A DNA stretch of 63,725 nucleotides, counting the filler, from Octopus bimaculoides (Eukaryota), in assembly GCF_001194135.2 (NCBI RefSeq). It is 8 parts of 7 records of this genome, joined end to end, with 100 filler letters (N's around TTAATTAATTAA, not from the genome) between each part and the next. Parts side by side here need not be neighbours in the genome. Positions count along the whole stretch, not along the records: positions 1 to 17,723 come from NC_068983.1; 7 more parts are not named here. One strand, given 5' to 3'. The position numbers and the translations under genes are program-made. Under the pieces are notes generated by a model. The model was not told where the DNA came from and made no database searches. It saw only the letters and a list, made by a program, of their open reading frames with translations. How positions within the stretch are numbered: the stretch's first letter is position 1; each line of letters begins with the position of its first letter. Shown here in pieces: positions 1,179-20,331 of the stretch.

Positions 1179-1556
1179 GGAATCTACATAGTCCGAGGTA
1201 TATTTGTAGAAAATTTCATTAAAAAATATCAATTTTCTTAAAAGTTAAGACGAATTGAATTGGACGCCGGTGAATTTTCCGAAATTCCCCACCTACCCCC
1301 TCCTAAAACACTCCCCTCCCCCAAGTTTTGTATATTCGGAATCTACATGATATAACACATATTCGTAGAAAATTTCATTAAAAAATATCCATTTTTCTGA
1401 AAGTTATGATCATCAAAAATCGGGAGGGGGTAGGAATCTGGGTAAATTTTCAGATTAACACCCGCACGATTTTCACTAGGGTGTTAGGGTGGGAATTCCG
1501 TCCCTAACCCTAACCCCCTAGAGAAAATTGTGCGGGTGTTAATCTGAAAATTTACC
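1179..1556. repeat. Non-autonomous element remnant with internal direct repeat and a hairpin enclosing telomere-like TTAGGG/CCCTAA
   Basis: 41-bp inverted arms 1441-1481 / 1516-1556 (2 mismatches) around TTAGGG...CCCTAACCCTAACCC. A 25-bp identical direct repeat lies at 1206-1230 and 1365-1389. Confidence 0.6.
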
Positions 1557-1790: not shown

Positions 1791-3104
1791 TTAAATTTCA
1801 GTACGGATTACTTTCATCAATTTCCTAGTGATTAGTTTGTGATTGTAAACCGACGTAATGTCAATATATTTCAAAACATGATCTAAAGAGAGCTTTCGTA
1901 TAGACTTGTTTTTTTTAATTAGAAAGACCTGTTGGTCCATGAACTGGAGAATGGAAGATGTAATGACAGGCAAGAAATGTACTTTTACAAACTAAACTGT
2001 CCTGACAATCAATACATTAAAGAAGGTTTAGGCGAGTCATTATCCATTACCAAAAGAACTTTGAGAGAAGATTGTTGTCCCTAGGGTACTTAGACACAGT
2101 AGGACAAAACACCTCAGACTACTCAGTGAAAAGATGACTGGTGATTTGTGGTTTGCCCAAACCTCAAGGCGGTTCTTATGATTTTAAATGCTCTAGGGTT
2201 TTCTAAATAGTAATTTATTTAAAAAAAAAAAGCCCCGTTTCATCATAGTTCAAATTTTGCTGTGAAACGAAGCCACTCATCTCCATAAAGTTTAAAAAGT
2301 GGTACTCACGAGCTACTTTATGGTCTGCACCAGCAGACTTATCACACTTTACATCATTATGTAATCCATTTCTTTTCCGGAATCTGGTAAACCAGCCCTT
2401 TGAAGCAAGGAAATCCAGCGCAGTATCATTTCCACTGGGAGAATTAGCTACAAGATCATCAAATAATTGTTTGGCTTTTACACAAATCATCGATTCACTT
2501 ATATTTTCACAAGCAATTTCTTTTTCTTTAATCCACACCAAAAGTAAATTTTCCATCTCTTCAATAAAATTGTTACGCGATTTACTAAGCTTGGTTATTC
2601 CCTTAGCTACCCGAACATTTTTTAATTTACATTTGTTTTTCAGTATGGTGCAGATAGTTGATTTTGCCACTCTATACTCCAAACTAAGGTTGCTAACACT
2701 AGCTCCATTTTCATGTTTACGTATTATTTCCTTCTTAGTTTCTATAGTAATTGATTTTCTAATTCGCTTTTGTCGATCCATGGTTATATAATTAGCTAAA
2801 AATGAGAAATAGTATTATTTTCTAAATAAAATATGAAAATTTGTGTACGTGAACGTTAACGAACCGTTCGTATATACCTTCCCAGCTACTTATATGTGTG
2901 CGTAGTCCACTCGTTCGTTATTCACAATTTATTCATTTAGCGTACCGTTCGTACACGTTCTACCACTCACTTATATGCGTGCATAGTCTGTTCGTGCTTG
3001 GTTAATCAAATTTTAGCTCGTTAAGCGAGTTCAATTTTCTTCGGAAAAATCGTTCGTTATTCAATGTTTGTTTAAAGAATCGTTCGTACATGAGTACCCT
3101 ACTG
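1791..3104 (-). mobile_element. Tigger/pogo-family DNA transposon, degenerate
   Basis: TIR-like 5' end CAGTAGGGTACTCATGTACGAACG (3104-3081) and subterminal CGTTCGT repeats. The HTH ORF ends at NYDETGL (first D). Downstream frameshifted remnants read ENPRAFK, KVLLVMDND and VHFLPVITSSILQFMDQQV, matching Tigger DDE motifs. Confidence 0.9.
2215..2781 (-). pseudogene. Tigger transposase N-terminal fragment (CENP-B/psq-type HTH + Tc5-type HTH), 188 aa open frame
   Basis: RKSITIETKKEII...SVSNLSLEYRVAKSTICTILKNK, EEMENLLLVWI, ICVKAKQLF, FLASKGWFTRFRKRNGL; the frame ends at a poly-T run. Confidence 0.85.
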
Positions 3105-4053: not shown

Positions 4054-4659
4054 GTGACAAATATAATTTTACTTCTGAATATATTCCTAGCCTTGAACTA
4101 AAACAATTTGGGGTTTATATATTCTTATATAGAATTCGTGTTTTGTAACATAGCTTTCTTTGTACAATGATTGCTGAAACTGACATTACAAATACTTTAT
4201 TGTGGATAACGATGATAAAAATTTTGATAAATAGAGGATATGGCTTTATTAATCTGGGAATCTGAATGAGACTTAAGTAGATCATCTATTTGTTTGGCTT
4301 ACATGGTCTTTAATGAAATTATAAGGCCAATACAGTTTTGAGACAGGCTATTCTTTATATTGGCTGCTGTATAGTCATTATATTTTCATTTACCACTATG
4401 GTCTCATAATCTGCATGAAATGGCAATTTGGGATTAATTGAAACTATATAAATTCTATGAACATTATAAGGCCTTTAAGGGCTCCTCGCTTAGTCATAAT
4501 CTTATCTAATTTCAGAAGTCATCATCATTGTTTTAATGCCCCATTTTCTATGCTTGCAGGGGTCAGATTTTCTACGGCCAGGTGCCTTTCTGTTGTCAGA
4601 CTTTACATGTTTCCAAACAAGGTCATATTTTCTCAATGGAAATGAATAATACCATTTGT

Positions 4660-5430
4660 AGCTGTGGCCAGTGCCCCCTGACTGGCACCTGTTCCAGTGG
4701 CATGTAAAATGCATCATCTGAACATGGTCGATGCCAGGTCCGCCTGACTGGCTCCCGTGTGGCATGTAAAAAAACACCATTCAAATGTGATCGATACCAA
4801 AACTGCCCGACTGGCTCTCGTACTGGTGGCATGTAGAAAACACCATCCGAATGTGGCCGTTGCCAGTACTCCTTGACTGGCTCCCGTGCCGGTGGCATGT
4901 AAAAAGCACTATCCAAACGTGATTGATGCCAGGCCCGCCTGACTAGCTCCTGTGCCGGTGACATGTAAAAAGCACCCACGACACTCTCGGAGTGGTTGGC
5001 ATTAGGAAGGGCATCCAGCTGTAGAAACATTGCTAGATTAGATTGGAGCCTGGTGCAGCCACTGGTTCTCCAGACTTCAGTCAAACCGTCCAACCCATGC
5101 CAGCATGGAAAACGGACATTAAATGATGATGACAATCAATTACACCTATTGCATAATGTGAAACCAAAATCGCAGCTGTGGCCAGTGCCTCTTGATTGGT
5201 TGCCGTTTCAGTGGCACATAAAATGCATCATCTGAATGTGGTCGATACCAGTGTCCCCTGACTGGCTCCTGTGCCAGTAGCATGTAAAAAGCACCCTCTG
5301 AATGTGGCTGATGCCAGTAACCCTGACTGGCTTCTGTGACAGTGGCATGTAAAAAGCACTATCTAAACGTGATCGATGCCAGGCTGCCTGACTGACTCCT
5401 TTTTTCAGTGGCATGTAAACGATGATCATG
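4660..5430 (+). repeat. RTE-LINE 3'UTR-derived repeat with about 65-bp tandem subrepeats
   Basis: About 9 copies of GGCATGTAAAAAGCAC-like cores at about 65-bp spacing. The tail at 4977-5135 matches the tails at 7800-7975 (-) and 10050-10218 (+) and ends in (GAT)n. Confidence 0.75.
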
Positions 5431-6751: not shown

Positions 6752-7735
6752 CTATAGAGTTGAATATCCATTCACAGAAAATAAATTAACTGGATATGAT
6801 TTAGAATTTGATGTAGGCAGCGTACTTGAGATCTCTACCAAATCAGAATTATTGCTGAGGTTGTCTTCAATTATATTGCCTGTTACAGATGTTATTGAAA
6901 TTAGCTGTACTTCATCCTGATCATCAGTATCGTTATCACAATCTTCTGAATGCTGCGATAAACAAGTGTCTTCAGATATATAGATGACATCACGGGAATC
7001 CAGATGTTTATTTGAATGAGAAACTCCAAAATCATTGTGTCTATTGATGACCTTTCCAGAAGTGGTACTGGCAGCAGGCTTTAACTGAACATCATTATTA
7101 TTTGTAGTAATGTTACTAATATCAACACACAGTTCTTCTTGAATACTATTTTGATTTTCTCCAAGACTACAGGGTTCTATTTTTAAGTGAAGAGAGTTGT
7201 ACTTTGTTGCAGGCTCTATTAATGGTTCCGCTTCAGTCTTGATATCAACAATCTGGTCTGTAACCATATTTTCTGCAGACCTTACATCAGAAACTGAAGT
7301 TGTGGTGACAGAAACATCAGCTTGCATGTTAATATTGCTATAATTATTCCTAAATAACTTCATAAACATTGAATTCTGAACCTCGTTAGGATCTCCTTGT
7401 GTTCTGGAAGGGAATAATCCTGACAAAGAACAAGGTTCTGCCAATAAAGGTTCCACCACACCAGATAAAATATCTTTTGTCTTAGCTTTGTTCAATTCCT
7501 CACAACAAAGATCTTCAAAATCTTTCATTTCTAATTTTTCAGCAATAGTCTTCAGTTGGACTAGAATGTCTTCATTCAGATCTAACACACCACTGTACAT
7601 GTATTCTGCAAATGCTAAAAGTCCTTCTTTACTGACTGAACTTGGAAAGACCACATTGGGAAATGAACCTTTTGATGAATGCAGGAGAACTGGCAGTAGT
7701 TTTGGAGACACAGCTCCTAAAACCATTTTATGAAT
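6752..7735 (-). CDS. STPR-BTB gene, last coding exon: C-terminal part of BTB/POZ domain plus low-complexity S/D/N tail
   Basis: Acceptor ttttttatatattttcAG| at 7736, phase 0. IHKMVLGAVSPKL...LLAFAEYMYSGVLDLNEDILVQLKTIAEKLEMKDFEDLC follows the BTB pattern (HkxvLaa.S; ll.ymYtG.l; A..L.m..l...C). Stop TAG at 6752-6754. Confidence 0.9.
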   Translation of the reverse strand: MHKMVLGAVSPKLLPVLLHSSKGSFPNVVFPSSVSKEGLLAFAEYMYSGVLDLNEDILVQLKTIAEKLEMKDFEDLCCEELNKAKTKDILSGVVEPLLAEPCSLSGLFPSRTQGDPNEVQNSMFMKLFRNNYSNINMQADVSVTTTSVSDVRSAENMVTDQIVDIKTEAEPLIEPATKYNSLHLKIEPCSLGENQNSIQEELCVDISNITTNNNDVQLKPAASTTSGKVINRHNDFGVSHSNKHLDSRDVIYISEDTCLSQHSEDCDNDTDDQDEVQLISITSVTGNIIEDNLSNNSDLVEISSTLPTSNSKSYPVNLFSVNGYSTL

Positions 7736-7799
7736 CTGAAAATATATAAAAAATACCTAGAATAAATGTGGCAAATATACAGTTTAATAGCATGTTACA

Positions 7800-8515
7800 T
7801 ATCATCATCATCATTTAATGTCCATTTTCCATGCTGGCATGGGTCAGACGGTTTGACTGAGGTCTGGAAAGTCAGCCGCTACACCAGGCTCCAATCTGAT
7901 CTGGCAATGTTTCTCCAGCTGGATGCTCATCCTAACACCAACCACTCTGAGGGTGTAGTGGGTGCTTTTTACATCACACTGGTACAGGAGCCAGTCAGGC
8001 AGCTCTAGTATTGATCACATTCGGATGGTGCGTTTTATGTGCCACCGGCACAGGAGCAAGTCAAGGGGCACTGGCATCGAACACGCTTGGGTGAGGCATT
8101 TTACGTGCCACCAGAACAACAGCCAGTCAGAGGGCACTGGCCACAGCTACAATTTTGGTTTTACTTGACTCAACAGGTCTTCTAAAGCATATCATATTGC
8201 CCAACACATCAAAGGTACTTTTAAATGGGCCGGATATGCAACACTGGCATTGGCCGTGGCTCCGATCTCACTTTAGTTCCCTGGTCTTCTCAATCACAGC
8301 ATATCTCCAAAGGTCTCAGTCTCCTGTCATTGCCTCCGTGAGGCCTAAAATTCGAAGGTCATGCTTCACCATCTCATCCCATGTCTTCTTGGGTCTACCT
8401 CTTCCACAGGCTCCTTCCACAGTTAGGGTGTGGCACTTCCTCACACAGCTGTCCTCATCCATGTGTAACCATACCAGTGCAGTCATCTCTCTTGCACACC
8501 ACATTTGATGCTTCT
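7800..8515 (-). mobile_element. RTE-clade LINE, 3' fragment
   Basis: DEDSCVRKCHTLTVEGACGRGRPKKTWDEMVKHDLRILGLTEAM (post-RT C-terminus), followed by a 3'UTR and (GAT)n tail. Confidence 0.85.
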
Positions 8516-8974
8516 TACGTCCAACTTTTCTCTCAGGGCATTTACACTCTGTCGTGTATGCACACAGTATTGGTGGTGGGGGCGGGCACAACCACGAACA
8601 AGAGAGAGTCATTTTAGGGAGCAGAGCAAACAAGAAAGAATTATTTTAAAGATTAGTATGAAATATGTATATATATGTAGCCAAGAAACAAGGTTAGTAA
8701 TGTTGCGAGTTAGATGGGTCTGAATGAATGAGGCGATTAAAAACAAGAGAAATTCTTAGCTTAGCTGTGCATATTTTCGAGTGTCATCAAACAGCCAAAC
8801 ACATGGAATAAACTTGCTAAATTATTTGTCAGTGGCCTGTTTCTAAATTCAATACATTCACTGAGTGCTTTCTTGCAAAATTTGCACATTTCATCTGAAC
8901 AATATTATTCAGATCAAATTATATCTACAAAGCTCCTCTCAATTTTAAGTGTTGATGATGAGGAATTGTAATCT

Positions 8975-10218
8975 TCCCCAAGATGTACCCAGTGCAAGCT
9001 ATGGACACATAAGAGGTGCAGCAATATCAGAGGAAGGTTAACTGGAAAAATAGCTTTTGTGTGTGGAAGGTGCACAGGTACAATAAACACTAAAAATGTG
9101 CAGGAAATAGGACTCTATAAGATGCCAGTGGGGTAAGCTAGAGGTAGTGGATAGCTTCCATTATCTAGGTGACTGAGTCAGAAGTGGAGGTGGATGCTCT
9201 GAAAGTGTAGCTGTGAGAATAAGAATAGGCTGGGCAAAGTTCAGAGAGTTCCTACTTCTGTTGGCAACAAAGGACCTCTCCCTCAGAGTGAAAGGCAGAC
9301 TGTATGATGTCTGTGTGCAATCAGCTATGTTACATGGCAGTGAAACATGGGCTGTGACAGCCGAGGACATGCGTAGGCTTGAAAGAAATGAAGCCAGTAT
9401 GCTTTGCTGGATGTGCAATGTCAGTACGCATGTTTAACAGAAAAAAGTTAGGCACAAGAGGCATCATATGTAGTGTGCAAGAGAGATGACTGTGCTGGTA
9501 TGGTCATGTGATGCATATGGACGAGGACAGCTGCGTAAAATGCCGATCTCTAACTGTGGAGGGAACCTATGGTAGAGGTAGATCCAGGAAGACATGGGAT
9601 GAGGTGGTGAAGCATTATTGTCGAATGTTGGGCCTCACAGAGGCAATGACTAGAGACTGAGACTTTCGGTGATATGCCATGCTTGAGAGGACCTGTCAAG
9701 CCATGTGAAACCATAGTCGTGGCCAATGTCGTTGTCATATTACTGCCACTTGTACTGGTGCCATGTAAGAGCACCTTTTGAATGTTAGGCCTCGTGACCA
9801 TTGCTGGTGTTGTGACATTAGCATCCGTGCTGGTGGCACTTGAAAAGCCTCTTTTGAGTGTTGGGCCTCATGGAGGCAATGTAGCGGATGCTACTGTCAT
9901 GTAACTAGCACCCGTGCTGGGTGTTGGGCCTCACAGAGGCAATGGCAAATGACCAAGACCTTCGGCAATATGCTGCACTTGAGAAGAAGCCCCATCAAAC
10001 CAAGTGAAACTGTAGTCGTGGTAGTTACTGGTGCCAGGCAACTGGCATGTAAAAGCACCCATTACACTCTTGGAGTGGTTGGCTTTAGGAAGGGTATCCA
10101 GCTATAGAAACAATGCCAAATCAGACTGGAGTCTGGTGCAGCCCCTCAGCTTATCAGCCCTGGCCAAACTGTCCAACCCATGCTAGCATGAACAACAGAC
10201 GATGATGATGATGATGAT
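8975..10218 (+). mobile_element. RTE-clade LINE, 3' part, degenerate
   Basis: VDSFHYLGD, RIRIGWAKFREFL, KGRLYDVCVQSAMLHGSETWAVTAEDMRRLERNE, GRGRSRKTWDE, then a 3'UTR ending in (GAT)n at about 10200-10218. Confidence 0.9.
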
Positions 10219-10552
10219 TGTTGAAAACATAGGATTCTAAAGAAGTTTTTGGAAAAAATAAAACTAAAGGAAGTAGGGTGCATATCTGACATGCCACTTC
10301 TAATTTCTTCCATTATACAACTGTTTATACTTACTAATTCCTAAGCATACCATCACTGATTTGTTTGGATCACAAGACTTTGGTCAAGATAGGACTACAG
10401 TAAAAGACTTGCCAAGGTGCCCTGTAGTGGGACTGAATCTGAAACTTTGTCTTTGATACTTTTGAAGTTGATAAAATAAAATACTAGTTAGATGTTGGAA
10501 GTTGAGATACATAATCCTAGATGTGAATAAAATAGAATTAAAACATACATAC

Positions 10553-10730
10553 CATTACATTTATGGTACCATTACTAATGTATGAGTCACAGAGGCGCCG
10601 TGCCTTCCATAGAGAAAACAGATTGGACATTACTGCTGTTTGATGATTTGGAACGACTAAAACACGTCTTTCTTGAACAGGAGGCACAGTTGATTGTGGG
10701 AACACTATGACTTCATCAGTCATTGAATGA
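10553..10730 (-). CDS. STPR-BTB gene, exon encoding the BTB N-terminus
   Basis: Acceptor gtatttacAG| (phase 2), donor ATG|GTATGT (phase 0). HQTAVMSNLFSLWKARRLCDSYISNGTINVM matches the BTB start (H...l..L..lr....LCD) and joins in frame to IHK of the next exon. Confidence 0.85.
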
Positions 10731-11189
10731 CTGTAAATACAAGATATGTAAAATAGCATTGGTTAGATATATAATATGGGAAAAGAAAACATATCAACAT
10801 ACTAAGGTAACATATTGCATGTGTTAGATTTAGATTAGGATACATAACTGATCTTCCTCCAAATACTAGTGAGTCACTAGTACTAGCTAATTTGTCTTTG
10901 CCAAATTCCAAAGCAGCCATCATTCAGGTATCCCCAATCCATTCTTTTCTCCCTCCTTTCTTCACCCTCTTCAACCCTGCATTGACCACTATGACCAATA
11001 CTTCCTTCTCAGAACATGAATCCTTTGGAATTTCCTACCCACTCGTTTCTTTCTTGCAGGTGTCAATCTGCAATAGATTAAATGGAATATTAACAGCATA
11101 AAGTTCACTAATCTTGGAAGGCCTGCAAAAGTGATGTGGGCTGCTCTTTCACAATATTCTTTTGGATGGGATACTGGGTCCAAGACCAG

Positions 11190-11380
11190 CAAGTTTGAGG
11201 GAAGGGGCCAAACCAATTACATTGACCCCAGTAGTTGACTTGTATCATATTTTATTGACCTTGAAGGGATGAAAGACGAAGTTGACCATGGTAGGATTTG
11301 AACTCAGAGTGTAAAGAGCTGGAAGAAATGCCACTTAACATTCTGTCCATCATGCTGATGATTCTGCCAGCTTGCCACCT
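11190..11380 (-). mobile_element. SINE family B copy
   Basis: Reverse-complement match to copies at 27940, 33528 and 52935 (GGCAGAATC...GAGTTCAAAT...CCTTTCATCC). Confidence 0.75.
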
Positions 11381-11787
11381 GTAGGTGTCATTAACCTAGG
11401 TATGGGAAAATGGGAATTAAATTATTGATGATGATGAAGATATTGTACAGATGAGTGGTTAGGTGTTCCACAAGCTGTTGCTTTTCATTAAGATTGTACA
11501 AGATGGACAGCTGGGATGTAATAAGGGAATTAAGCTAATGAAGCAAACAACAATGGTGGTGGAGAGAAACTTAGTCAAATTGGTGCAAAGTAAAAGTAAC
11601 CTTGTTACAACATGTTCCCATCATAGCAGGCATAGCTTGAACATCATCTCTGCCAGACTGCTAATAAAGTGGTAATGAACAACACAGGTACAAAAAGAAG
11701 ATAAAATACTAAAATTAGACAAGTGATCATGTTGCAGCTTTGTAGTCTAGCGTGTTTATGACTCATTGTTAGTGATGTCCCCCATAG

Positions 11788-11918
11788 ATGTTGTTTTTAA
11801 TCAAGAAGAAAAGAATTTTGCAATGAAACAAGCATGTGATGAACCTAACACTTCATCTTGTAAACAAGCAAGGCCTAAACTCTCTGCAGTTAAAGAAATT
11901 ATTGATGATATTCTTTGA
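11788..11918 (+). CDS. Candidate downstream/terminal exon of the antisense plus-strand gene
   Basis: Acceptor cccccatAG| in phase 1, compatible with the donor at 6636; VVFNQEEKNFAMKQACDEPNTSSCKQARPKLSAVKEIIDDIL-stop. Confidence 0.3.
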
Positions 11919-12897
11919 ATGAAGAGATTACACTTATGTTGGTAATGAGAGTAATTTGGACAATCCAACTGGTGTCGAGGGAACAAATATGATAGTTAAG
12001 AAGTAAGCCCATGGTTTTGTTGGAGACATGTTTCCTAGTAATTCTGGGGTGCTGATTTCAAGAAAATAAATATCAATAGAATAATAAAAGCAGCTGACCA
12101 GTCTATTATGGACAAACAATACAATTGTGTTTATTCAGAAAATAAGCAGCAGAAAAACTTGACGTGATAAAAGAAAATTGACTGTAGTTTTGAAATCAGG
12201 ATGCCAATTTTAGTCTAAGTGAAGTAAAAAAGCAACCTCAAGAGAAATTATGTTCATAATTGTTCCCCTGTTATTGTTACTCTTCTGAATATTTCTGATT
12301 CTATCCATCAGTTTGTCTAACAAATATGGTAGTTGAGAGAAAGGCTTATTATTATTATCCTCCAGAATTTTTTTGTGATTTTGTCCATTAGTTTACCTGC
12401 GATCATTACTCTTGAGTTGTATATGCAACTATCTATTTTTTTTTTTTTTGCTCAGGAGCCCTACTCCATGTTAGATACAGGGGCCCAGGTCTGAGAGGGT
12501 TAAAGAATCTAGAATATACTTTAGCTTTATATTAATGCAACACTTTAGTTTTGAAACAACTGAAGAAGTTTTTGTTTAAGATCAGCCAACACTCTCTTAT
12601 GTTTATTGCTAAAAAACAAAAAAAAAACAATGTGTTTTGGTGAATAATAAGAAAAGCTGTTGCAAACGAATGACTGATGAGAGCTGTTAATGTTTTCTAT
12701 AGATTTTGTTAGGTTTCAGTAAAATTATAGATTCCTTCAGTTTCTAAAATTTTATCTTATCCTTTTTTTGCCTCTTAAAGAGGTTATAGAGGAATTTTTA
12801 ACAAATGGTCATTTTCTGATGATCAGATGTCCAATACAGAATCAATTAGAGCTAAAGAAGTCAATAATATGAAAGAAATTAGATGAGTAACACTTAC

Positions 12898-13120
12898 GAT
12901 GTTGATCTTCTTGTTTTTGAGGCTTTTGAATTTATTTGTTTGGAAATTGTGTCTGGGGTTACATCTTCTATCTGAATTGTAGCTGCTTCAGGGGCTTTCC
13001 TTTTCCATTTTGATGAACTCATTTCATTAAGATTTTGCATATTGTTAGCATGAGTATGATGCAATTGAAGAGTTGAGGCACAATCAAATCTTGATGTTTT
13101 TAAGAGAGATATATTATTTC
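12898..13120 (-). CDS. STPR-BTB gene, linker exon (223 nt, phase 1 to 2)
   Basis: Acceptor tatttcacAG|, donor ATC|GTAAGT. The frame GNNISLLKTSRF...SKTRRSTS is open, and its phases match both neighbouring exons. Confidence 0.8.
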
Positions 13121-13771
13121 CTGTGAAATAGAATATAAGTAACTCTAATACTCAATTAGGATCATTTTAAAATATGAAGTGGTTAGGAAAGACAAAATAG
13201 TAGATGTGTTAGAATATTGTTGAGATTTCAAAATGACTTAGGTAATAATTGAACAATTATCCAAACAGGAATACAATGCAGAGTCATGGAAATCACTTGA
13301 AAACAACACTATCAGAAGACAGTAAGGTATATACATCCTTTGGTGTAAATGACTAAGTAGACTGATGATAAAATCTAACAAACAAAACATTTGCTGTTTA
13401 GATCATATGATGTAGTTAAAAATTCTCAAGAAGAAACCTGCATGCACTGTGACTTATTCAAAACCCAAATACTATTTGAGTGAAGAATGAAGTATATACA
13501 AGGTTCTGATAGTTGTCACATGACACACATTGTAAACAGTAACATAAATCAAAATGATAACAATAATAATATAAAAGACTATGATTATATCAGAATATTC
13601 AAATTAGTTTAAAAGTGAGCAACAGTTCAAATTATCTAAGCACAATGGGCAGCAACTAATTGTACAAAATATTAACATCAGTTATGAGAGTCAAACATAT
13701 AAATGCTTAAATATGTACAGAAATTAAACTAGATATCACAGTTAAATGAAAAAATTCAGAGGGACAAATAC

Positions 13772-14201
13772 CAGGATTATATTGCATCTGCTCCTGATGA
13801 TGGAATTTTGGGACATCATAATACTTTAAAAGGTTGACTTTAATGTAGCCATTAGCAATTTGCTTTTCTTCTTGAGCCTTTTTACCCTGTCGAGTATAAT
13901 GATTCTTTGGCCCTGTAGCACGTCTGTTCCTTGCATATTGAGCAAGTTTCTTAAGTCTTTCATATCTTTCCTCTTTTGTTTCTTTGGTCCTTCTTTTCAA
14001 TTCATTCTGAGACAATCTTCTAAGCCTCTGTTTTCTCTCTTCTGCTGTTTCTTCAGCTCGTCTCTTCTGTGCATTTAAAGACAGCTTTCGTAGTCTCTCA
14101 AGTCTCTCATCATTTGTTTCATTTGCACGTCTTTCTCTTTCACGCAGTTTTTTGGCTTCTTGCTTTTCAGTTTCATTATGGTATTTCTTGAACCGCCCCA
14201 T
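13772..14201 (-). CDS. STPR-BTB gene, first coding exon with three 23-aa STPR repeats
   Basis: Acceptor ttctttgaAG| at 14211, ATG at 14201, donor CTG|GTATTT at 13771 (phase 1). Repeats: ETNDERLERLRKLSLNAQKRRAE / ETAEERKQRLRRLSQNELKRRTK / ETKEERYERLKKLAQYARNRRAT. Confidence 0.85.
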
Positions 14202-14625
14202 TATTTTACCCTTCAAAGAAATAAAAATTTATTGAAAACATACAAAAATAAATTTGATTCAGATTTTTTTCCTGAGTACAACGTTTTGGGTCTACAGACA
14301 TAATGTAAACTTTTTAACACGACTCTGAAAATTAAAAATCTATCTTGCACAATTACCTTAGTGATGAATAACAACTTCCTTTTATACTTTTGTATGAGAT
14401 TAGTATATCAATTACCAGAGAAAAAATATAATTATTTTCTCGGTTTTAAAGAGTTAAAATTCTCTGTTTTCATTCGTATAACATTTCAACTACTTTACAA
14501 TGAGATATATTCTAAAGCAAGATTTCATTATCTCTTCACAGTAGTTATACATCCCCCAGCATTATTTTATTCATAAGAACGGTAACCCCACAAAATTCTT
14601 CATCCTGATTTGCAGTCACGATCTT

Positions 14626-18057: not shown

Positions 18058-18268
18058 ACTATCCTTTCTACTAAGAGGTCTGGAATTTGTGGGGAGGAGA
18101 CCAGTCGATTACATCGATCCCAGTGTTCAGCTGGTACTTAATTTATCGACCCTGATAGGATGAATGGCCAAGTCGACCTCGGTGGAATTTGAACTCAGAA
18201 CATAGTGGCAGAGGAAATACTAAGCATTTCGCCCGCCCCGCTAACGATTCTGCCATCTAATCGCCTTG
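18058..18268 (-). mobile_element. SINE family B copy
   Basis: Reverse complement of the family B body (GGCAGAATCGTTAG...GAGTTCAAATTCC...GGTCGATAAATTAAGTACCAG). Confidence 0.8.
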
Positions 18269-19270
18269 AATAACAAGAACAAGAATTGAAGAAGAAAGTT
18301 TAGTCGAAATCAAAATGTACAAAAACACGAGAATAGGGTTAATAAAAGTTGTGTTCTTCCAGAATAGAGGTCGATTGATCCCCGAGGAAAATATCAAACG
18401 AGGAGAAAGCGTTTAACCAAGATGTAACAGAATTTGACGAACTTGGAAGTGAATATTTCCATACACCACATCTAAAACATTCAATATCAATGGCGATATC
18501 CTTGGCATTGTCAAAGAAAATTAAAGAATACGAAAATACGTTAAAGAGACTTGATTGAGAGCTCCTGGTAAATAGAAATTTTCTATCGTGAACATTTCAT
18601 CATTCTATACCAGCAACCTCTCAGGTCCTTACAAAGATACAATACATCACATTACAAAGAACTATCGGACGAGTGCATGCCTGAATCTAATGTATAAACT
18701 GTGAACTGCTTTTCTGAGCTTGTTTCCTTGCGATGTCAAGAATATCGTTACAAACGAATAAACATATAGAAAGAAAATAATTTGAGTATTGAGCACTTTT
18801 TCACTAATCCGAAGAAGGTTGTAGTTACAAAAACGGAATTCGATTTTATTCTCCTCTCGTCTGAGGCATTTAGCATCGCTAAAGTTCTAAAACAAATTTG
18901 CTACATTGCTGGAGACCATCCTGAAGTTGAAAGTACAAAACGAAATATCTTTCACCCCTATGAGATATATTGCAGGGGTGTGTTTCAAGTAGACAATCTT
19001 AGAGTTGTGAAGAAAATGCACTAAAAAAAAAAAGAACCATGTGTCTTTTCATCGATCTTCTCTTTTTCAACTAAAAAAAAAATATCATATTGTCTCAGAT
19101 ATGTTGATTATCTTTAACATATCAAGTATGGAGCCACGTTCTTTCTTCAAAAATCCAATGTTCAGCCATATTTTTACTCAAGAGCATTGATATATATCTT
19201 GTCGTTCCAACAATAATCTATGTCGAGCTAAAGGTGAATATTCGGTACAGGATTTATGGACTGCTCATAA

Positions 19271-19460
19271 ATGTATGTATGTATGTATGTATGTATGTAT
19301 GTATGTATGTATGTATGTATGTATGTATGCATGTATATATATGAATGCATACATACATAAATGTATGTATGTATGTTTGTATGTTTGTATGTATGTGTGT
19401 ATGTACGCATGCATGTATATATATGAATGCATACATACATGAATGTATGTATGTATGCAT
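19271..19460. repeat. (ATGT)n microsatellite, compound
   Basis: Seen directly in the sequence. Confidence 0.95.
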
Positions 19461-20331
19461 GCATGTATGAATATAAGCATGTGTGTACGATGCATATATG
19501 TATGCAGGTACGTATGTATGATTAAGAACAACTTCAGCAAAAGATAGAAATATAGCTAAAATAATACATAGCATTTTTTTTTTTAGATTAATTATCTGAT
19601 TTATACATGTGAATCCCTTATCGATTTCTATGAAAATATCTAAATTGAATGTAATCAGTCCAAGCAAAAATACGAATATACCAACACTAGCGCCCCTGAA
19701 AGTAATATTCTCTGGGAATGCACAAAAGCCTTTTTCAGAGTTATTTACTTTAAATTGTTATTATCTCATATCTGATTAGCCTGTTATTACGTAACATGCT
19801 TTGCGATTTTAGTATACATACCTTATTAGCATTTCCTCCCATGTTCTATATACTCTGGGAATGCATTAAAGCCCTTTTTCGGGTCTACTTTATTTGAATT
19901 CTTACTATCGGGTAACTAATTTCATGTTATTACAAAACTGACTTCACAATTTGCGTATTCATAACTTATTGGGAAGTCCTAAATACAAGATCCTGTGTAA
20001 GACAGTTCGGTATTCGCTGTAAACGCACAAAAACCGTTTTAAGGGCTACATACTTTGTATTGTTATTATTAGATTAGCGAAACAATTATGAGAAAAGAAC
20101 CAAGGGATAAACCCCGCTTTTCCGGGAATTACAGAGTACGTCAGCTAGTACAGAAATACATACATACATACATACATACATACATAAATTGTATATACAA
20201 ACATGCAAGCTTACATATATAGATATCTATATAGATGCGCGCATATGTGTGTGTGTGAGAGAGAGAGTGAGTGTGTGTATGTATGCACGTGTGCGTGTGT
20301 GTATGTATGTATGTATGTACGTACGTACGTA

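What the first reader, a model, noticed from the sequence alone, without database searches (positions are those of the whole stretch)
6752..14201. Spliced gene fusing STPR DNA-binding repeats to a zinc-finger-less BTB domain
Seen: four minus-strand exons with canonical GT-AG sites and matching phases (1, 2, 0) give an uninterrupted 1815-nt CDS (604 aa): three 23-aa ETxxER..RL repeats, a linker, a BTB/POZ domain and an acidic tail. Known: 23-aa STPR repeats are the DNA-binding unit of Bombyx FMBP-1 and human ZNF821; BTB transcription factors normally have an N-terminal BTB and C-terminal C2H2/psq/BEN domains. Inference: STPR placed before an internal BTB is an architecture I do not recognise and could be a lineage-specific transcription factor built by exon shuffling. 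An in-frame ATG (MTDEVIV) at the start of the BTB exon suggests the BTB gene was once independent. Caveat: the phase-2 match at that junction has a 1-in-3 chance of being accidental.
Basis: partly seen in the sequence, partly recalled or inferred. Interest (0 to 1): 0.82.

Follow-up and report, generated by a model that had tools for sequence, protein, structure and literature searches.

The report
Octopus STPR–BTB transcription factor gene
The four exons form a real octopus gene, already in RefSeq as an uncharacterised protein, that joins a rare STPR DNA-binding repeat to a BTB dimerisation domain; it belongs to a mollusc gene family that swaps different DNA-binding modules onto one constant BTB body.

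Summary
The four minus-strand exons (14201-13772, 13120-12898, 10730-10553, 7735-6752) give a 604-aa product. It is 100% identical to Octopus bimaculoides RefSeq XP_014774303 (LOC106872009, "uncharacterized"). Pfam finds STPR (residues 9-59) and BTB (258-360). The STPR region aligns without gaps to the Bombyx FMBP-1 crystal structure. A confident AlphaFold model of the BTB matches transcription-factor BTBs (PLZF, BCL6). Exon boundaries, phases and splice sites are identical in O. sinensis. The same four-exon STPR-BTB layout occurs in octopus paralogues and in Argonauta.

The architecture is therefore real but already in databases. It is one case of a wider pattern: a cephalopod BTB family, tandemly arrayed here, in which an internal BTB plus acidic tail follows an interchangeable N-terminal DNA-binding module. 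Modules seen are STPR, pogo CENP-B/Tc5 HTH, THAP, FLYWCH, CG-1-like, FAR1-like and DUF3504. The next gene, LOC106872008, whose first pogo-derived exon is at window 2781-2310, uses three alternative phase-1 DBD exons on one acceptor. An abalone gene does the same.

I saw no RNA reads for this gene. Interest is moderate.

The parts
13772..14201 (-). Coding exon 1 of LOC106872009 (ATG at 14201; 430 nt; donor G|GTATTT, phase 1). Encodes the STPR module and a conserved '..EQMQ..P' exon end.
   Evidence: identical boundaries in O. sinensis; same exon in paralogues and Argonauta
14211..14212 (-). Putative AG acceptor after a pyrimidine tract, 9 nt upstream of the ATG. It implies that exon 1 is an internal exon fed by one or more upstream 5'UTR exons (inferred).
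   Evidence: sequence. The paralogous STPR exons show the same arrangement, and the sequence just upstream of the O. sinensis ATG is conserved. No RNA evidence.
14121..14174 (-). Degenerate 18-aa STPR-like unit (residues 10-27, ETEKQEAKKLRERERRAN)
   Evidence: predicted helix 10-26, pLDDT about 96
13914..14120 (-). Three canonical 23-aa STPR repeats (residues 28-96), each with Glu1, Thr2 and Arg9
12898..13120 (-). Coding exon 2 (223 nt; enters in phase 1, leaves in phase 2). Fast-evolving basic linker with a KWKRK motif.
10553..10730 (-). Coding exon 3 (178 nt). Encodes the BTB N-terminal extension (VLVVPNHQ..) and the first half of the BTB fold (from 10663).
6752..7735 (-). Coding exon 4 (984 nt including the TAG stop at 6752-6754). 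7735-7442 encodes the second half of the BTB fold. 7441-6755 encodes the acidic Ser/Asn/Asp/Glu-rich tail with conserved short motifs.
2310..2781 (-). Not part of this gene: the first alternative coding exon (isoform X2) of the next tandem paralogue, LOC106872008. It encodes a pogo-type CENP-B_N + HTH_Tnp_Tc5 module. Donor C|GTGAGT, phase 1.

Best explanation
Window 6752-14201 (minus strand) is the protein-coding gene LOC106872009 of Octopus bimaculoides. Shown: it has four coding exons. It encodes an N-terminal STPR array (one degenerate and three canonical 23-aa helices), a poorly conserved basic linker, an internal BTB domain of the transcription-factor (ZBTB) type with the beta1-alpha1 extension, and a 230-aa acidic, disordered tail with a few conserved short motifs. 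It is the first unit of a tandem array of paralogues. In that array a constant 'exon 2-3-4' body (linker, BTB, tail) is preceded by a DNA-binding exon that always ends in phase 1. In this gene the only such exon is STPR. In the next gene three alternatives (pogo HTH, STPR, pogo HTH) join one acceptor. Inferred mechanism: the STPR helices lie along the DNA major groove, probably of AT-rich DNA, as in Bombyx FMBP-1. The BTB makes homodimers and, because it is 80-91% identical among the octopus paralogues, probably heterodimers with sister proteins that carry other DNA-binding modules. The acidic tail recruits partners. On this reading the protein is a sequence- or shape-reading dimeric transcription or chromatin regulator, and the family is a combinatorial set built by exon shuffling and capture of DNA-binding exons, several of which derive from transposases.
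For: Gene model: (100% identity to RefSeq XP_014774303). O. sinensis has identical exon lengths for exons 1-3, the same GT/AG sites, and a concatenation that translates exactly to XP_036357332. Argonauta hians has the same four-exon order. Constraint: 48 amino-acid changes against 62 +/- 4 expected from random substitutions (0.065% of simulations reach 48 or fewer). Only 3% of such simulations keep the frame free of stops. Both coding indels are in frame, and dN/dS is 0.25 for STPR, 0.23 for BTB and 0.28 for the tail. Domains: Pfam STPRs and BTB are above their cut-offs. A 70-residue gap-free alignment to FMBP-1 (5D23) has E=6e-9. AlphaFold gives four helices of about 21 residues broken at each 'ET', with pLDDT about 96, and a BTB at pLDDT 73-95 with beta1 at 241-243. 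Foldseek's best matches are PLZF, BCL6, ZBTB9, BACH2 and LRF, with TM about 0.75. Family. Phase-1 donors and the shared acceptor. The BTB is the best-conserved module, at 80-91% among octopus paralogues against about 50-59% for STPR. Intronless RNA-type contigs from a cuttlefish join an N-terminal module to the BTB in one ORF (L003 THAP-BTB; L004 STPR-like-BTB). STPR DNA binding along the major groove of AT-rich DNA is from PMC4856987.
Against: I could not see any RNA read or transcript contig for this particular gene. The protein collection held no Logan transcript-derived copy of it. The only related Logan hit (P0042) is a genomic read-through ORF. The STPR score is modest (33 bits, against 59-66 in paralogues), and the array is one repeat shorter than theirs. 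Constraint is weak. dN (0.036) is similar to intron divergence (0.03-0.06), and exon nucleotide divergence is no lower than that of introns. Exon 2 shows 10 non-synonymous changes against 1 synonymous. DNA binding, dimerisation and any regulatory role are inferred from homology only.
Confidence: 0.8

Rival explanations
1. There are two separate genes. A small STPR gene (exons 1-2) and a BTB gene starting at the MTDEVIV ATG in exon 3 were joined only by gene prediction.
For: No transcript evidence for this locus was accessible. An in-frame ATG sits 9 nt into exon 3. The bridging exon 2 evolves as if unconstrained.
Against: The same junctions and phases are kept in O. sinensis, in three paralogues and in Argonauta. 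The Met is not conserved in paralogues. Exon 2 has no stop codon in either species, and its GT donor is conserved. Cuttlefish RNA-type contigs carry N-terminal module plus BTB in one uninterrupted ORF. In the neighbouring gene, three DNA-binding exons share the exon-2 acceptor in frame.
Confidence: 0.05
2. The gene is real, but the BTB works mainly as a CUL3 substrate-adaptor module, so that the protein recruits ubiquitin ligase to DNA-bound targets, rather than as a transcription-factor dimeriser.
For: The best sequence matches in the PDB are gigaxonin and KLHL3, which are CUL3 adaptors. A long conserved helix follows the BTB (348-375).
Against: No BACK, Kelch or MATH domain is present. Structural neighbours are ZBTB-type BTBs (PLZF, BCL6, ZBTB9, LRF, BACH2). 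The partners are DNA-binding domains, as in ZBTB factors.
Confidence: 0.1
3. The gene is a decaying duplicate: an expressed or unexpressed paralogue that is losing function.
For: It has one fewer STPR repeat and a weaker STPR score than its paralogues. dN is about equal to intron divergence. Exon 2 has dN/dS above 1. No transcript contigs were found.
Against: The 604-613-aa frame is intact in O. bimaculoides, O. sinensis and O. vulgaris. There are significantly fewer amino-acid changes than under neutrality (0.065% of simulations), and only in-frame indels. Splice sites are conserved.
Confidence: 0.07

Closest known systems
Bombyx mori FMBP-1 and vertebrate ZNF821 (STPR DNA-binding domain, Pfam PF21107)
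   Same: Tandem 23-residue repeats with Glu1, Thr/Ser2 and Arg9. Gap-free alignment to the solved FMBP-1 STPR. Predicted zig-zag of helices of about 21 residues.
   Different: The STPR is N-terminal here. It has three canonical repeats rather than four, and it is fused to a BTB. FMBP-1 has the STPR at its C-terminus behind acidic and basic stretches (PMC4856987). ZNF821 pairs it with C2H2 fingers (my own knowledge).
Octopus CENPB-BTB and THAP-BTB proteins noted by Mukherjee & Moroz 2023 (PMC10027918)
   Same: The same gene family, and in part the same loci. LOC106872008 isoforms X1 and X2 and LOC115209549 carry pogo HTH or THAP in front of a BTB and tail that are 80-87% identical to those of this gene.
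   Different: That paper treats the BTB as 'transposon-derived'. It does not mention STPR, the alternative 5' exons or the tandem array.
Drosophila lola and mod(mdg4) (TTK-type BTB with alternative DNA-binding exons)
   Same: One BTB body is combined with many alternative DNA-binding modules, including FLYWCH, by alternative exon use. Isoforms are numerous, and heteromerisation among family BTBs has been proposed (PMC11426971).
   Different: The layout is a mirror image. Here the variable module is N-terminal (alternative 5' coding exons) and the BTB is internal. The FxLRWN TTK motif is absent (RVLVVPNHQ instead), and the fold neighbours are classical dimeric ZBTB domains. TTK-type BTBs are reported as arthropod-specific.
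Vertebrate ZBTB/POK factors (PLZF, BCL6, LRF)
   Same: The BTB fold has the beta1-alpha1 extension, with TM about 0.75 to PLZF and BCL6. The BTB is paired with a DNA-binding domain.
   Different: There are no C2H2 fingers, the BTB is not N-terminal, and the DNA-binding domain lies upstream of it.
Host-transposase fusion genes formed by splice capture (my own knowledge: Cosby et al. 2021, tetrapods)
   Same: The neighbouring exon at 2781-2310 is a truncated pogo transposase (CENP-B_N + Tc5 HTH). A GT donor splices it to host exons just before the DDE domain, and the unspliced frame still reads '..NYDETGLFFFK*'.
   Different: For the STPR exon itself I found no evidence of a transposon origin.

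Membership tests
STPR domain (PF21107; FMBP-1/ZNF821 type) | Tandem repeats of exactly 23 residues | tested here: met
   Units start at residues 28, 51 and 74. An 18-aa degenerate unit starts at residue 10.
STPR domain (PF21107; FMBP-1/ZNF821 type) | Conserved Glu1, Thr/Ser2 and Arg9 in each repeat (PMC4856987) | tested here: met
   ETNDERLER, ETAEERKQR and ETKEERYER. The degenerate unit has Lys at position 9.
STPR domain (PF21107; FMBP-1/ZNF821 type) | Score above the Pfam gathering threshold, and alignment to a solved STPR | tested here: met
   33.1 bits against a 27-bit cut-off. E=6e-9 with a 70-residue gap-free alignment to 5D23.
STPR domain (PF21107; FMBP-1/ZNF821 type) | Binds DNA along the major groove | not testable with these tools
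   Only the helical zig-zag is predicted.
BTB/POZ domain (PF00651), ZBTB (transcription-factor) subtype | Full BTB fold including the N-terminal beta1-alpha1 extension | tested here: met
   Pfam covers model positions 4-108 of 110. The AlphaFold model has beta1 at 241-243 and alpha1 at 253-260, at pLDDT 73-95. Foldseek matches PLZF, BCL6 and ZBTB9 with TM about 0.75.
BTB/POZ domain (PF00651), ZBTB (transcription-factor) subtype | Homodimerisation | not testable with these tools
   No multimer prediction or assay was available.
ZBTB/POK zinc-finger proteins | N-terminal BTB followed by C-terminal C2H2 fingers | tested here: not met
   No zinc-finger hit. The BTB is at residues 241-375 of 604, downstream of the DNA-binding domain.
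TTK-type BTB (arthropod lola, mod(mdg4), ttk) | FxLRWN motif in the N-terminal extension (PMC11426971) | tested here: not met
   The corresponding segment reads RRVLVVPNHQ. A search with the N-terminal half alone finds no TTK-type structure.
BTB-BACK-Kelch / CUL3 adaptors | BACK and Kelch (or MATH) domains after the BTB | tested here: not met
   No such Pfam hits at E<=1. The region after residue 375 is predicted disordered.
Cephalopod 'N-terminal DBD - internal BTB - acidic tail' family (unnamed) | Internal BTB with the xLVVPNHQ..SLWK.GRLCD extension, a conserved post-BTB EPLLAEPCSLSGL segment, and a C-terminal PYPxxLF motif | tested here: met
   Alignments A1, A3 and A4. The profile search finds only 35 representatives at E<=1e-30 among 1.84e9 proteins, and every named member I looked up is a cephalopod.
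Cephalopod 'N-terminal DBD - internal BTB - acidic tail' family (unnamed) | A DNA-binding coding exon ending in phase 1, spliced to a common linker exon | tested here: met
   Exon 1 is 430 nt. The same phase holds for STPR, Tc5-A and Tc5-B of LOC106872008 and for the STPR exon of the third gene.
Host-transposase fusion | DNA-binding module demonstrably derived from a transposase | tested here: inconclusive
   This is met for the neighbour's exon at 2781-2310. For the STPR exon, the word-based search returned only one orthologous fragment, so its origin could not be traced.

The most novel reading that the evidence does not exclude
LOC106872009 is one unit of an undescribed molluscan system, present at least in cephalopods and abalone. 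In it a constant body (BTB plus acidic tail) is combined with interchangeable N-terminal DNA-binding modules by alternative 5' coding exons and tandem duplication. The modules are STPR, pogo HTH, THAP, FLYWCH, CG-1-like, FAR1-like, DUF3504 and C2H2. This would be a mirror-image, independently evolved counterpart of the arthropod lola and mod(mdg4) loci. The near-identical BTBs could let products with different DNA-binding modules heterodimerise into a combinatorial regulatory network fed by transposase capture.
Probability: 0.5. Interest if true: 0.65.

Novelty: new variant of a known kind. Interest (0 to 1): 0.5.

Why it matters
STPR is a rare and little-studied DNA-binding fold, and this is a clear case of it coupled to a dimerisation domain. 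The locus also shows, within one window, how new transcription factors are assembled. Phase-compatible DNA-binding exons, some of them visibly truncated transposases, are plugged onto one BTB body and then multiplied by tandem duplication. If the modular design holds across molluscs, it is a convergent counterpart of the insect lola and mod(mdg4) strategy. It would also be a candidate contributor to lineage-specific gene regulation in cephalopods, whose regulatory novelty is of wide interest. The gene model itself adds nothing new to the databases.

Tried and rejected
1. The alternative donor at 13886 (566-aa model) is rejected, because the orthologue and paralogues conserve the segment up to 13772.

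I used cluster membership instead.

3. Searching with the STPR exon alone returned one hit, a genomic read-through ORF from another octopus. It gave no transcript evidence and no clue to the origin of the STPR exon.

4. The first AlphaFold run, with 12 sequences, gave an unusable BTB (pLDDT below 50). A 36-sequence alignment fixed this.

5. I considered membership of the TTK-type BTBs because of the shared 'NHQ', and rejected it. The FxLRWN motif is absent, gigaxonin shows the same His, and no TTK structure matches the N-terminal half.

6. Look-ups of LOC106872006 and LOC106877732 isoforms on contigs failed because those products are not on record. The full extent of the tandem array was therefore not mapped.

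7. Searching papers for the SRA run numbers did not identify the species. I inferred it as Acanthosepion pharaonis or a close relative, from near-identity over about 620 residues.

8. Rfam and tRNA scans of the window found nothing.

9. ORF fragments in intron 3 gave no Pfam hit.

10. No paper mentions these loci.
Full report
**Observation.** All introns are GT...AG, and the phases after exons 1, 2 and 3 are 1, 2 and 0. The stop-codon probability on this strand is 0.071 per codon. Open frames of 143 and 327 codons therefore have chance probabilities of 3e-5 and 4e-11. Pfam finds STPRs (PF21107, 33.1 bits, cut-off 27) and BTB (PF00651, 38.4 bits, residues 258-360) and no zinc finger. Residues 28-96 are three exact 23-aa units with Glu1, Thr2 and Arg9, preceded by an 18-aa degenerate unit. 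The last 239 residues have pI 4.3.

**Identity of the locus.** A database search returned full-length STPR+BTB proteins from Octopus sinensis (LOC115209332, 91% identity), several paralogues, and Argonauta hians. The 90%-identity cluster of the O. sinensis protein contains a 604-aa O. bimaculoides entry: XP_014774303/4/5/7, 'uncharacterized protein LOC106872009'. The window is therefore O. bimaculoides chromosome CM046603.1 at about 135.4 Mb, and the model has long been public.

**Comparative support for the splice model.**
- The O. sinensis locus (L001) has the same exon lengths for exons 1-3 and the same splice dinucleotides. Its four exons concatenate to exactly XP_036357332.
- Argonauta hians has the same order of STPR exon, linker exon and two BTB/tail exons.
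- Between the two octopus species dN/dS is 0.35 overall: STPR 0.25, BTB 0.23, tail 0.28. Exon 2 has 10 non-synonymous changes against 1 synonymous.
- The constraint is modest. Exon nucleotide divergence (4-6%) is no lower than intron divergence (3-6%).
- Even so, 87 random substitutions would give 62 +/- 4 amino-acid changes against the 48 observed; only 0.065% of simulations give 48 or fewer. Such substitutions would leave the frame stop-free only 3% of the time.
- The only coding indels are in frame.
- I could not see RNA reads for this gene, and no transcript-derived copy exists in the protein collection. This gap should be stated plainly.

**Domains.**
- The STPR region aligns without gaps over 70 residues to the crystallised Bombyx FMBP-1 STPR (5D23, E=6e-9).
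- AlphaFold predicts four helices (10-26, 30-50, 53-73, 76-100) broken at each 'ET', at pLDDT about 96. This is the pattern described for BmSTPR on DNA.
- With a 36-sequence family alignment the BTB is modelled at pLDDT 73-95, with beta1 at 241-243 and alpha1 at 253-260.
- Its Foldseek neighbours are transcription-factor BTBs: PLZF, BCL6, ZBTB9, LRF and BACH2, with TM about 0.75. By sequence the nearest solved chains are gigaxonin, ZBTB17/BCL6 and KLHL3.
- The arthropod TTK motif FxLRWN is absent.
- Residues 103-237 and 371-613 are predicted disordered.

**What is really there: a modular family.** Other isoforms and paralogues carry the same BTB and tail behind different N-terminal modules.
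- In O. bimaculoides the gene immediately downstream, LOC106872008, has three alternative first coding exons. They are a pogo-type Tc5 HTH exon (L002 10001-10472, which is window 2781-2310), an STPR exon (18148-18616) and a CENP-B_N+Tc5 exon (19141-19750).
- All three end in phase 1 and join one exon-2 acceptor in frame, giving ..R|KFEAP..G|KFEAP and ..R|KFEAP. The same arrangement exists in O. sinensis.
- A third STPR-BTB gene follows (L002 32274 onward).
- A profile of BTB plus tail, searched against 1.84 billion representatives, finds only 145 proteins at E<=1e-3 and 35 at E<=1e-30. Below about 1e-14 the hits become ordinary N-terminal BTB proteins.
- The strong hits I scanned have an internal BTB, and most of them carry a recognisable N-terminal module in front of it; a few (for example P0032, P0036, P0047, P0049, P0051) show no Pfam module there. 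The modules seen are STPR or STPR-like repeats, CENP-B_N/Tc5, THAP, FLYWCH, CG-1-like, FAR1/ZSWIM3_N-like, DUF3504/QRICH1, or a whole HTH+DDE_3 transposase.
- Every named member I looked up at this level is a cephalopod: three Octopus species, Argonauta and Acanthosepion pharaonis. Several loci have 6 to 15 or more isoforms.
- Two cuttlefish-like Logan contigs of 3.5 and 1.7 kb carry THAP-BTB and STPR-like-BTB as single uninterrupted ORFs with UTRs. They are therefore spliced mRNAs.
- The BTB with its extension is the best-conserved module: 80-91% among octopus paralogues and 59-64% to cuttlefish. STPR is about 50-59% among STPR paralogues and the linker about 25-30%.

**A gastropod parallel.** The profile also hits Haliotis rufescens LOC124116851 at E about 1e-15. 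Its isoforms share one body with an internal BTB and an acidic tail. They begin with three C2H2 fingers, FLYWCH, or one of two THAP domains.

**Interpretation.** Two points are not supported. First, the architecture is already in public annotation and recurs in paralogues and species. Second, the MTDEVIV Met is peculiar to this orthologue group (HSVSSEIL, NSEILL and HSLSDEVV elsewhere), so it is not a relic start codon. The most likely function is a dimeric DNA-binding regulator: STPR on AT-rich DNA, the BTB for homo- and perhaps heterodimerisation within the family, and the acidic tail for partner recruitment. All three steps are inferred from homology.

**Prior knowledge.** Mukherjee and Moroz 2023 noted that most Octopus CENPB and THAP factors carry a BTB/POZ domain, which they called transposon-derived. 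They did not mention STPR, alternative 5' exons or the array. No paper in the library cites these loci. Bonchuk et al. 2024 describe multi-isoform BTB factors as a feature of the arthropod-specific TTK type. The molluscan family is a non-TTK, mirror-image analogue.

**Verdict.** This is a real gene, already annotated and ordinary as a gene model. Its architecture is an unusual variant of the BTB transcription factor, and it belongs to a modular family that appears not to have been described as such. Interest is moderate (0.5). The main missing piece is direct RNA evidence.

Noticed in passing
window 2215-2781 (-): The first alternative coding exon (isoform X2) of the next gene, LOC106872008, is a truncated pogo-type transposase (CENP-B_N + HTH_Tnp_Tc5). 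The donor C|GTGAGT at 2310 cuts just before the DDE domain, and the unspliced frame still reads '..NYDETGLFFFK*'. I recognise this from my own knowledge as the first catalytic-Asp motif of pogo transposases. The exon is 96% identical at protein level to the O. sinensis exon.
   Followed up: partly
window 4809-5132 and 7805-8128 (also 4614-5384, 7957-8178, 9922-10218): An interspersed repeat with internal tandem units of about 65 nt forms a 324-nt, 82% complementary inverted pair that brackets the last coding exon. One arm lies 70 nt upstream of the exon-4 acceptor and the other about 1.6 kb past the stop. Many copies are also present in the O. sinensis locus. If both arms are transcribed, the pair could form a long double-stranded RNA.
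   Followed up: no
window 8241-8438 vs 9538-9735, and 8468-8533 vs 9439-9504 (intron 3): A second inverted pair lies inside the GC-richer intron 3. It carries short ORF fragments (for example '..GRGRPKKTWDEMVKHDLRILGLTEAMT') present in both orientations. There was no Pfam hit. These are probably decayed retroelement copies.
   Followed up: partly
window 12898-13120 (exon 2): The linker exon has 10 non-synonymous changes against 1 synonymous between O. bimaculoides and O. sinensis (dN/dS about 2.9), and is only about 25-30% identical among paralogues. Its length, frame and splice sites are nevertheless conserved.
   Followed up: partly
window 6752-14201 vs L001 10001-17570: Exon nucleotide divergence (4.3-6.3%) is no lower than intron divergence (3.3-6.1%), and dS (0.10) exceeds the intron rate. 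Constraint shows up only in the type of change and in the absence of frameshifts.
   Followed up: yes
window 6755-7441 (tail, residues 376-604): Short motifs are conserved across paralogues and cuttlefish within an otherwise disordered acidic tail: D(V/I)I(Y/N)ISD/E, (E)LQLISxTS, SDLVEISS (these resemble SUMO-interaction motifs, from my own knowledge) and a C-terminal PYPxxLF.
   Followed up: no
window 1183-1440 vs L001 22412-22660: A segment of about 260 nt just downstream of the pogo-derived exon aligns to O. sinensis in inverted orientation (88% identity), at the point where the collinear alignment ends. A nearby direct repeat lies at 1179-1250 and 1338-1409.
   Followed up: no
Haliotis rufescens LOC124116851 (P0086, P0087, P0229, P0232): One abalone gene with at least 14 RefSeq isoforms shares a constant body (internal BTB plus acidic tail) behind alternative N-terminal modules: three C2H2 fingers, FLYWCH, or one of two THAP domains. 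This is the same design as in the cephalopod family.
   Followed up: partly
window 13886 (-): A second GT donor in the same phase (CAGG|GTAAAA) would give a 566-aa isoform lacking residues 106-143. Comparative data favour the 13772 donor, but alternative use is not excluded.
   Followed up: partly
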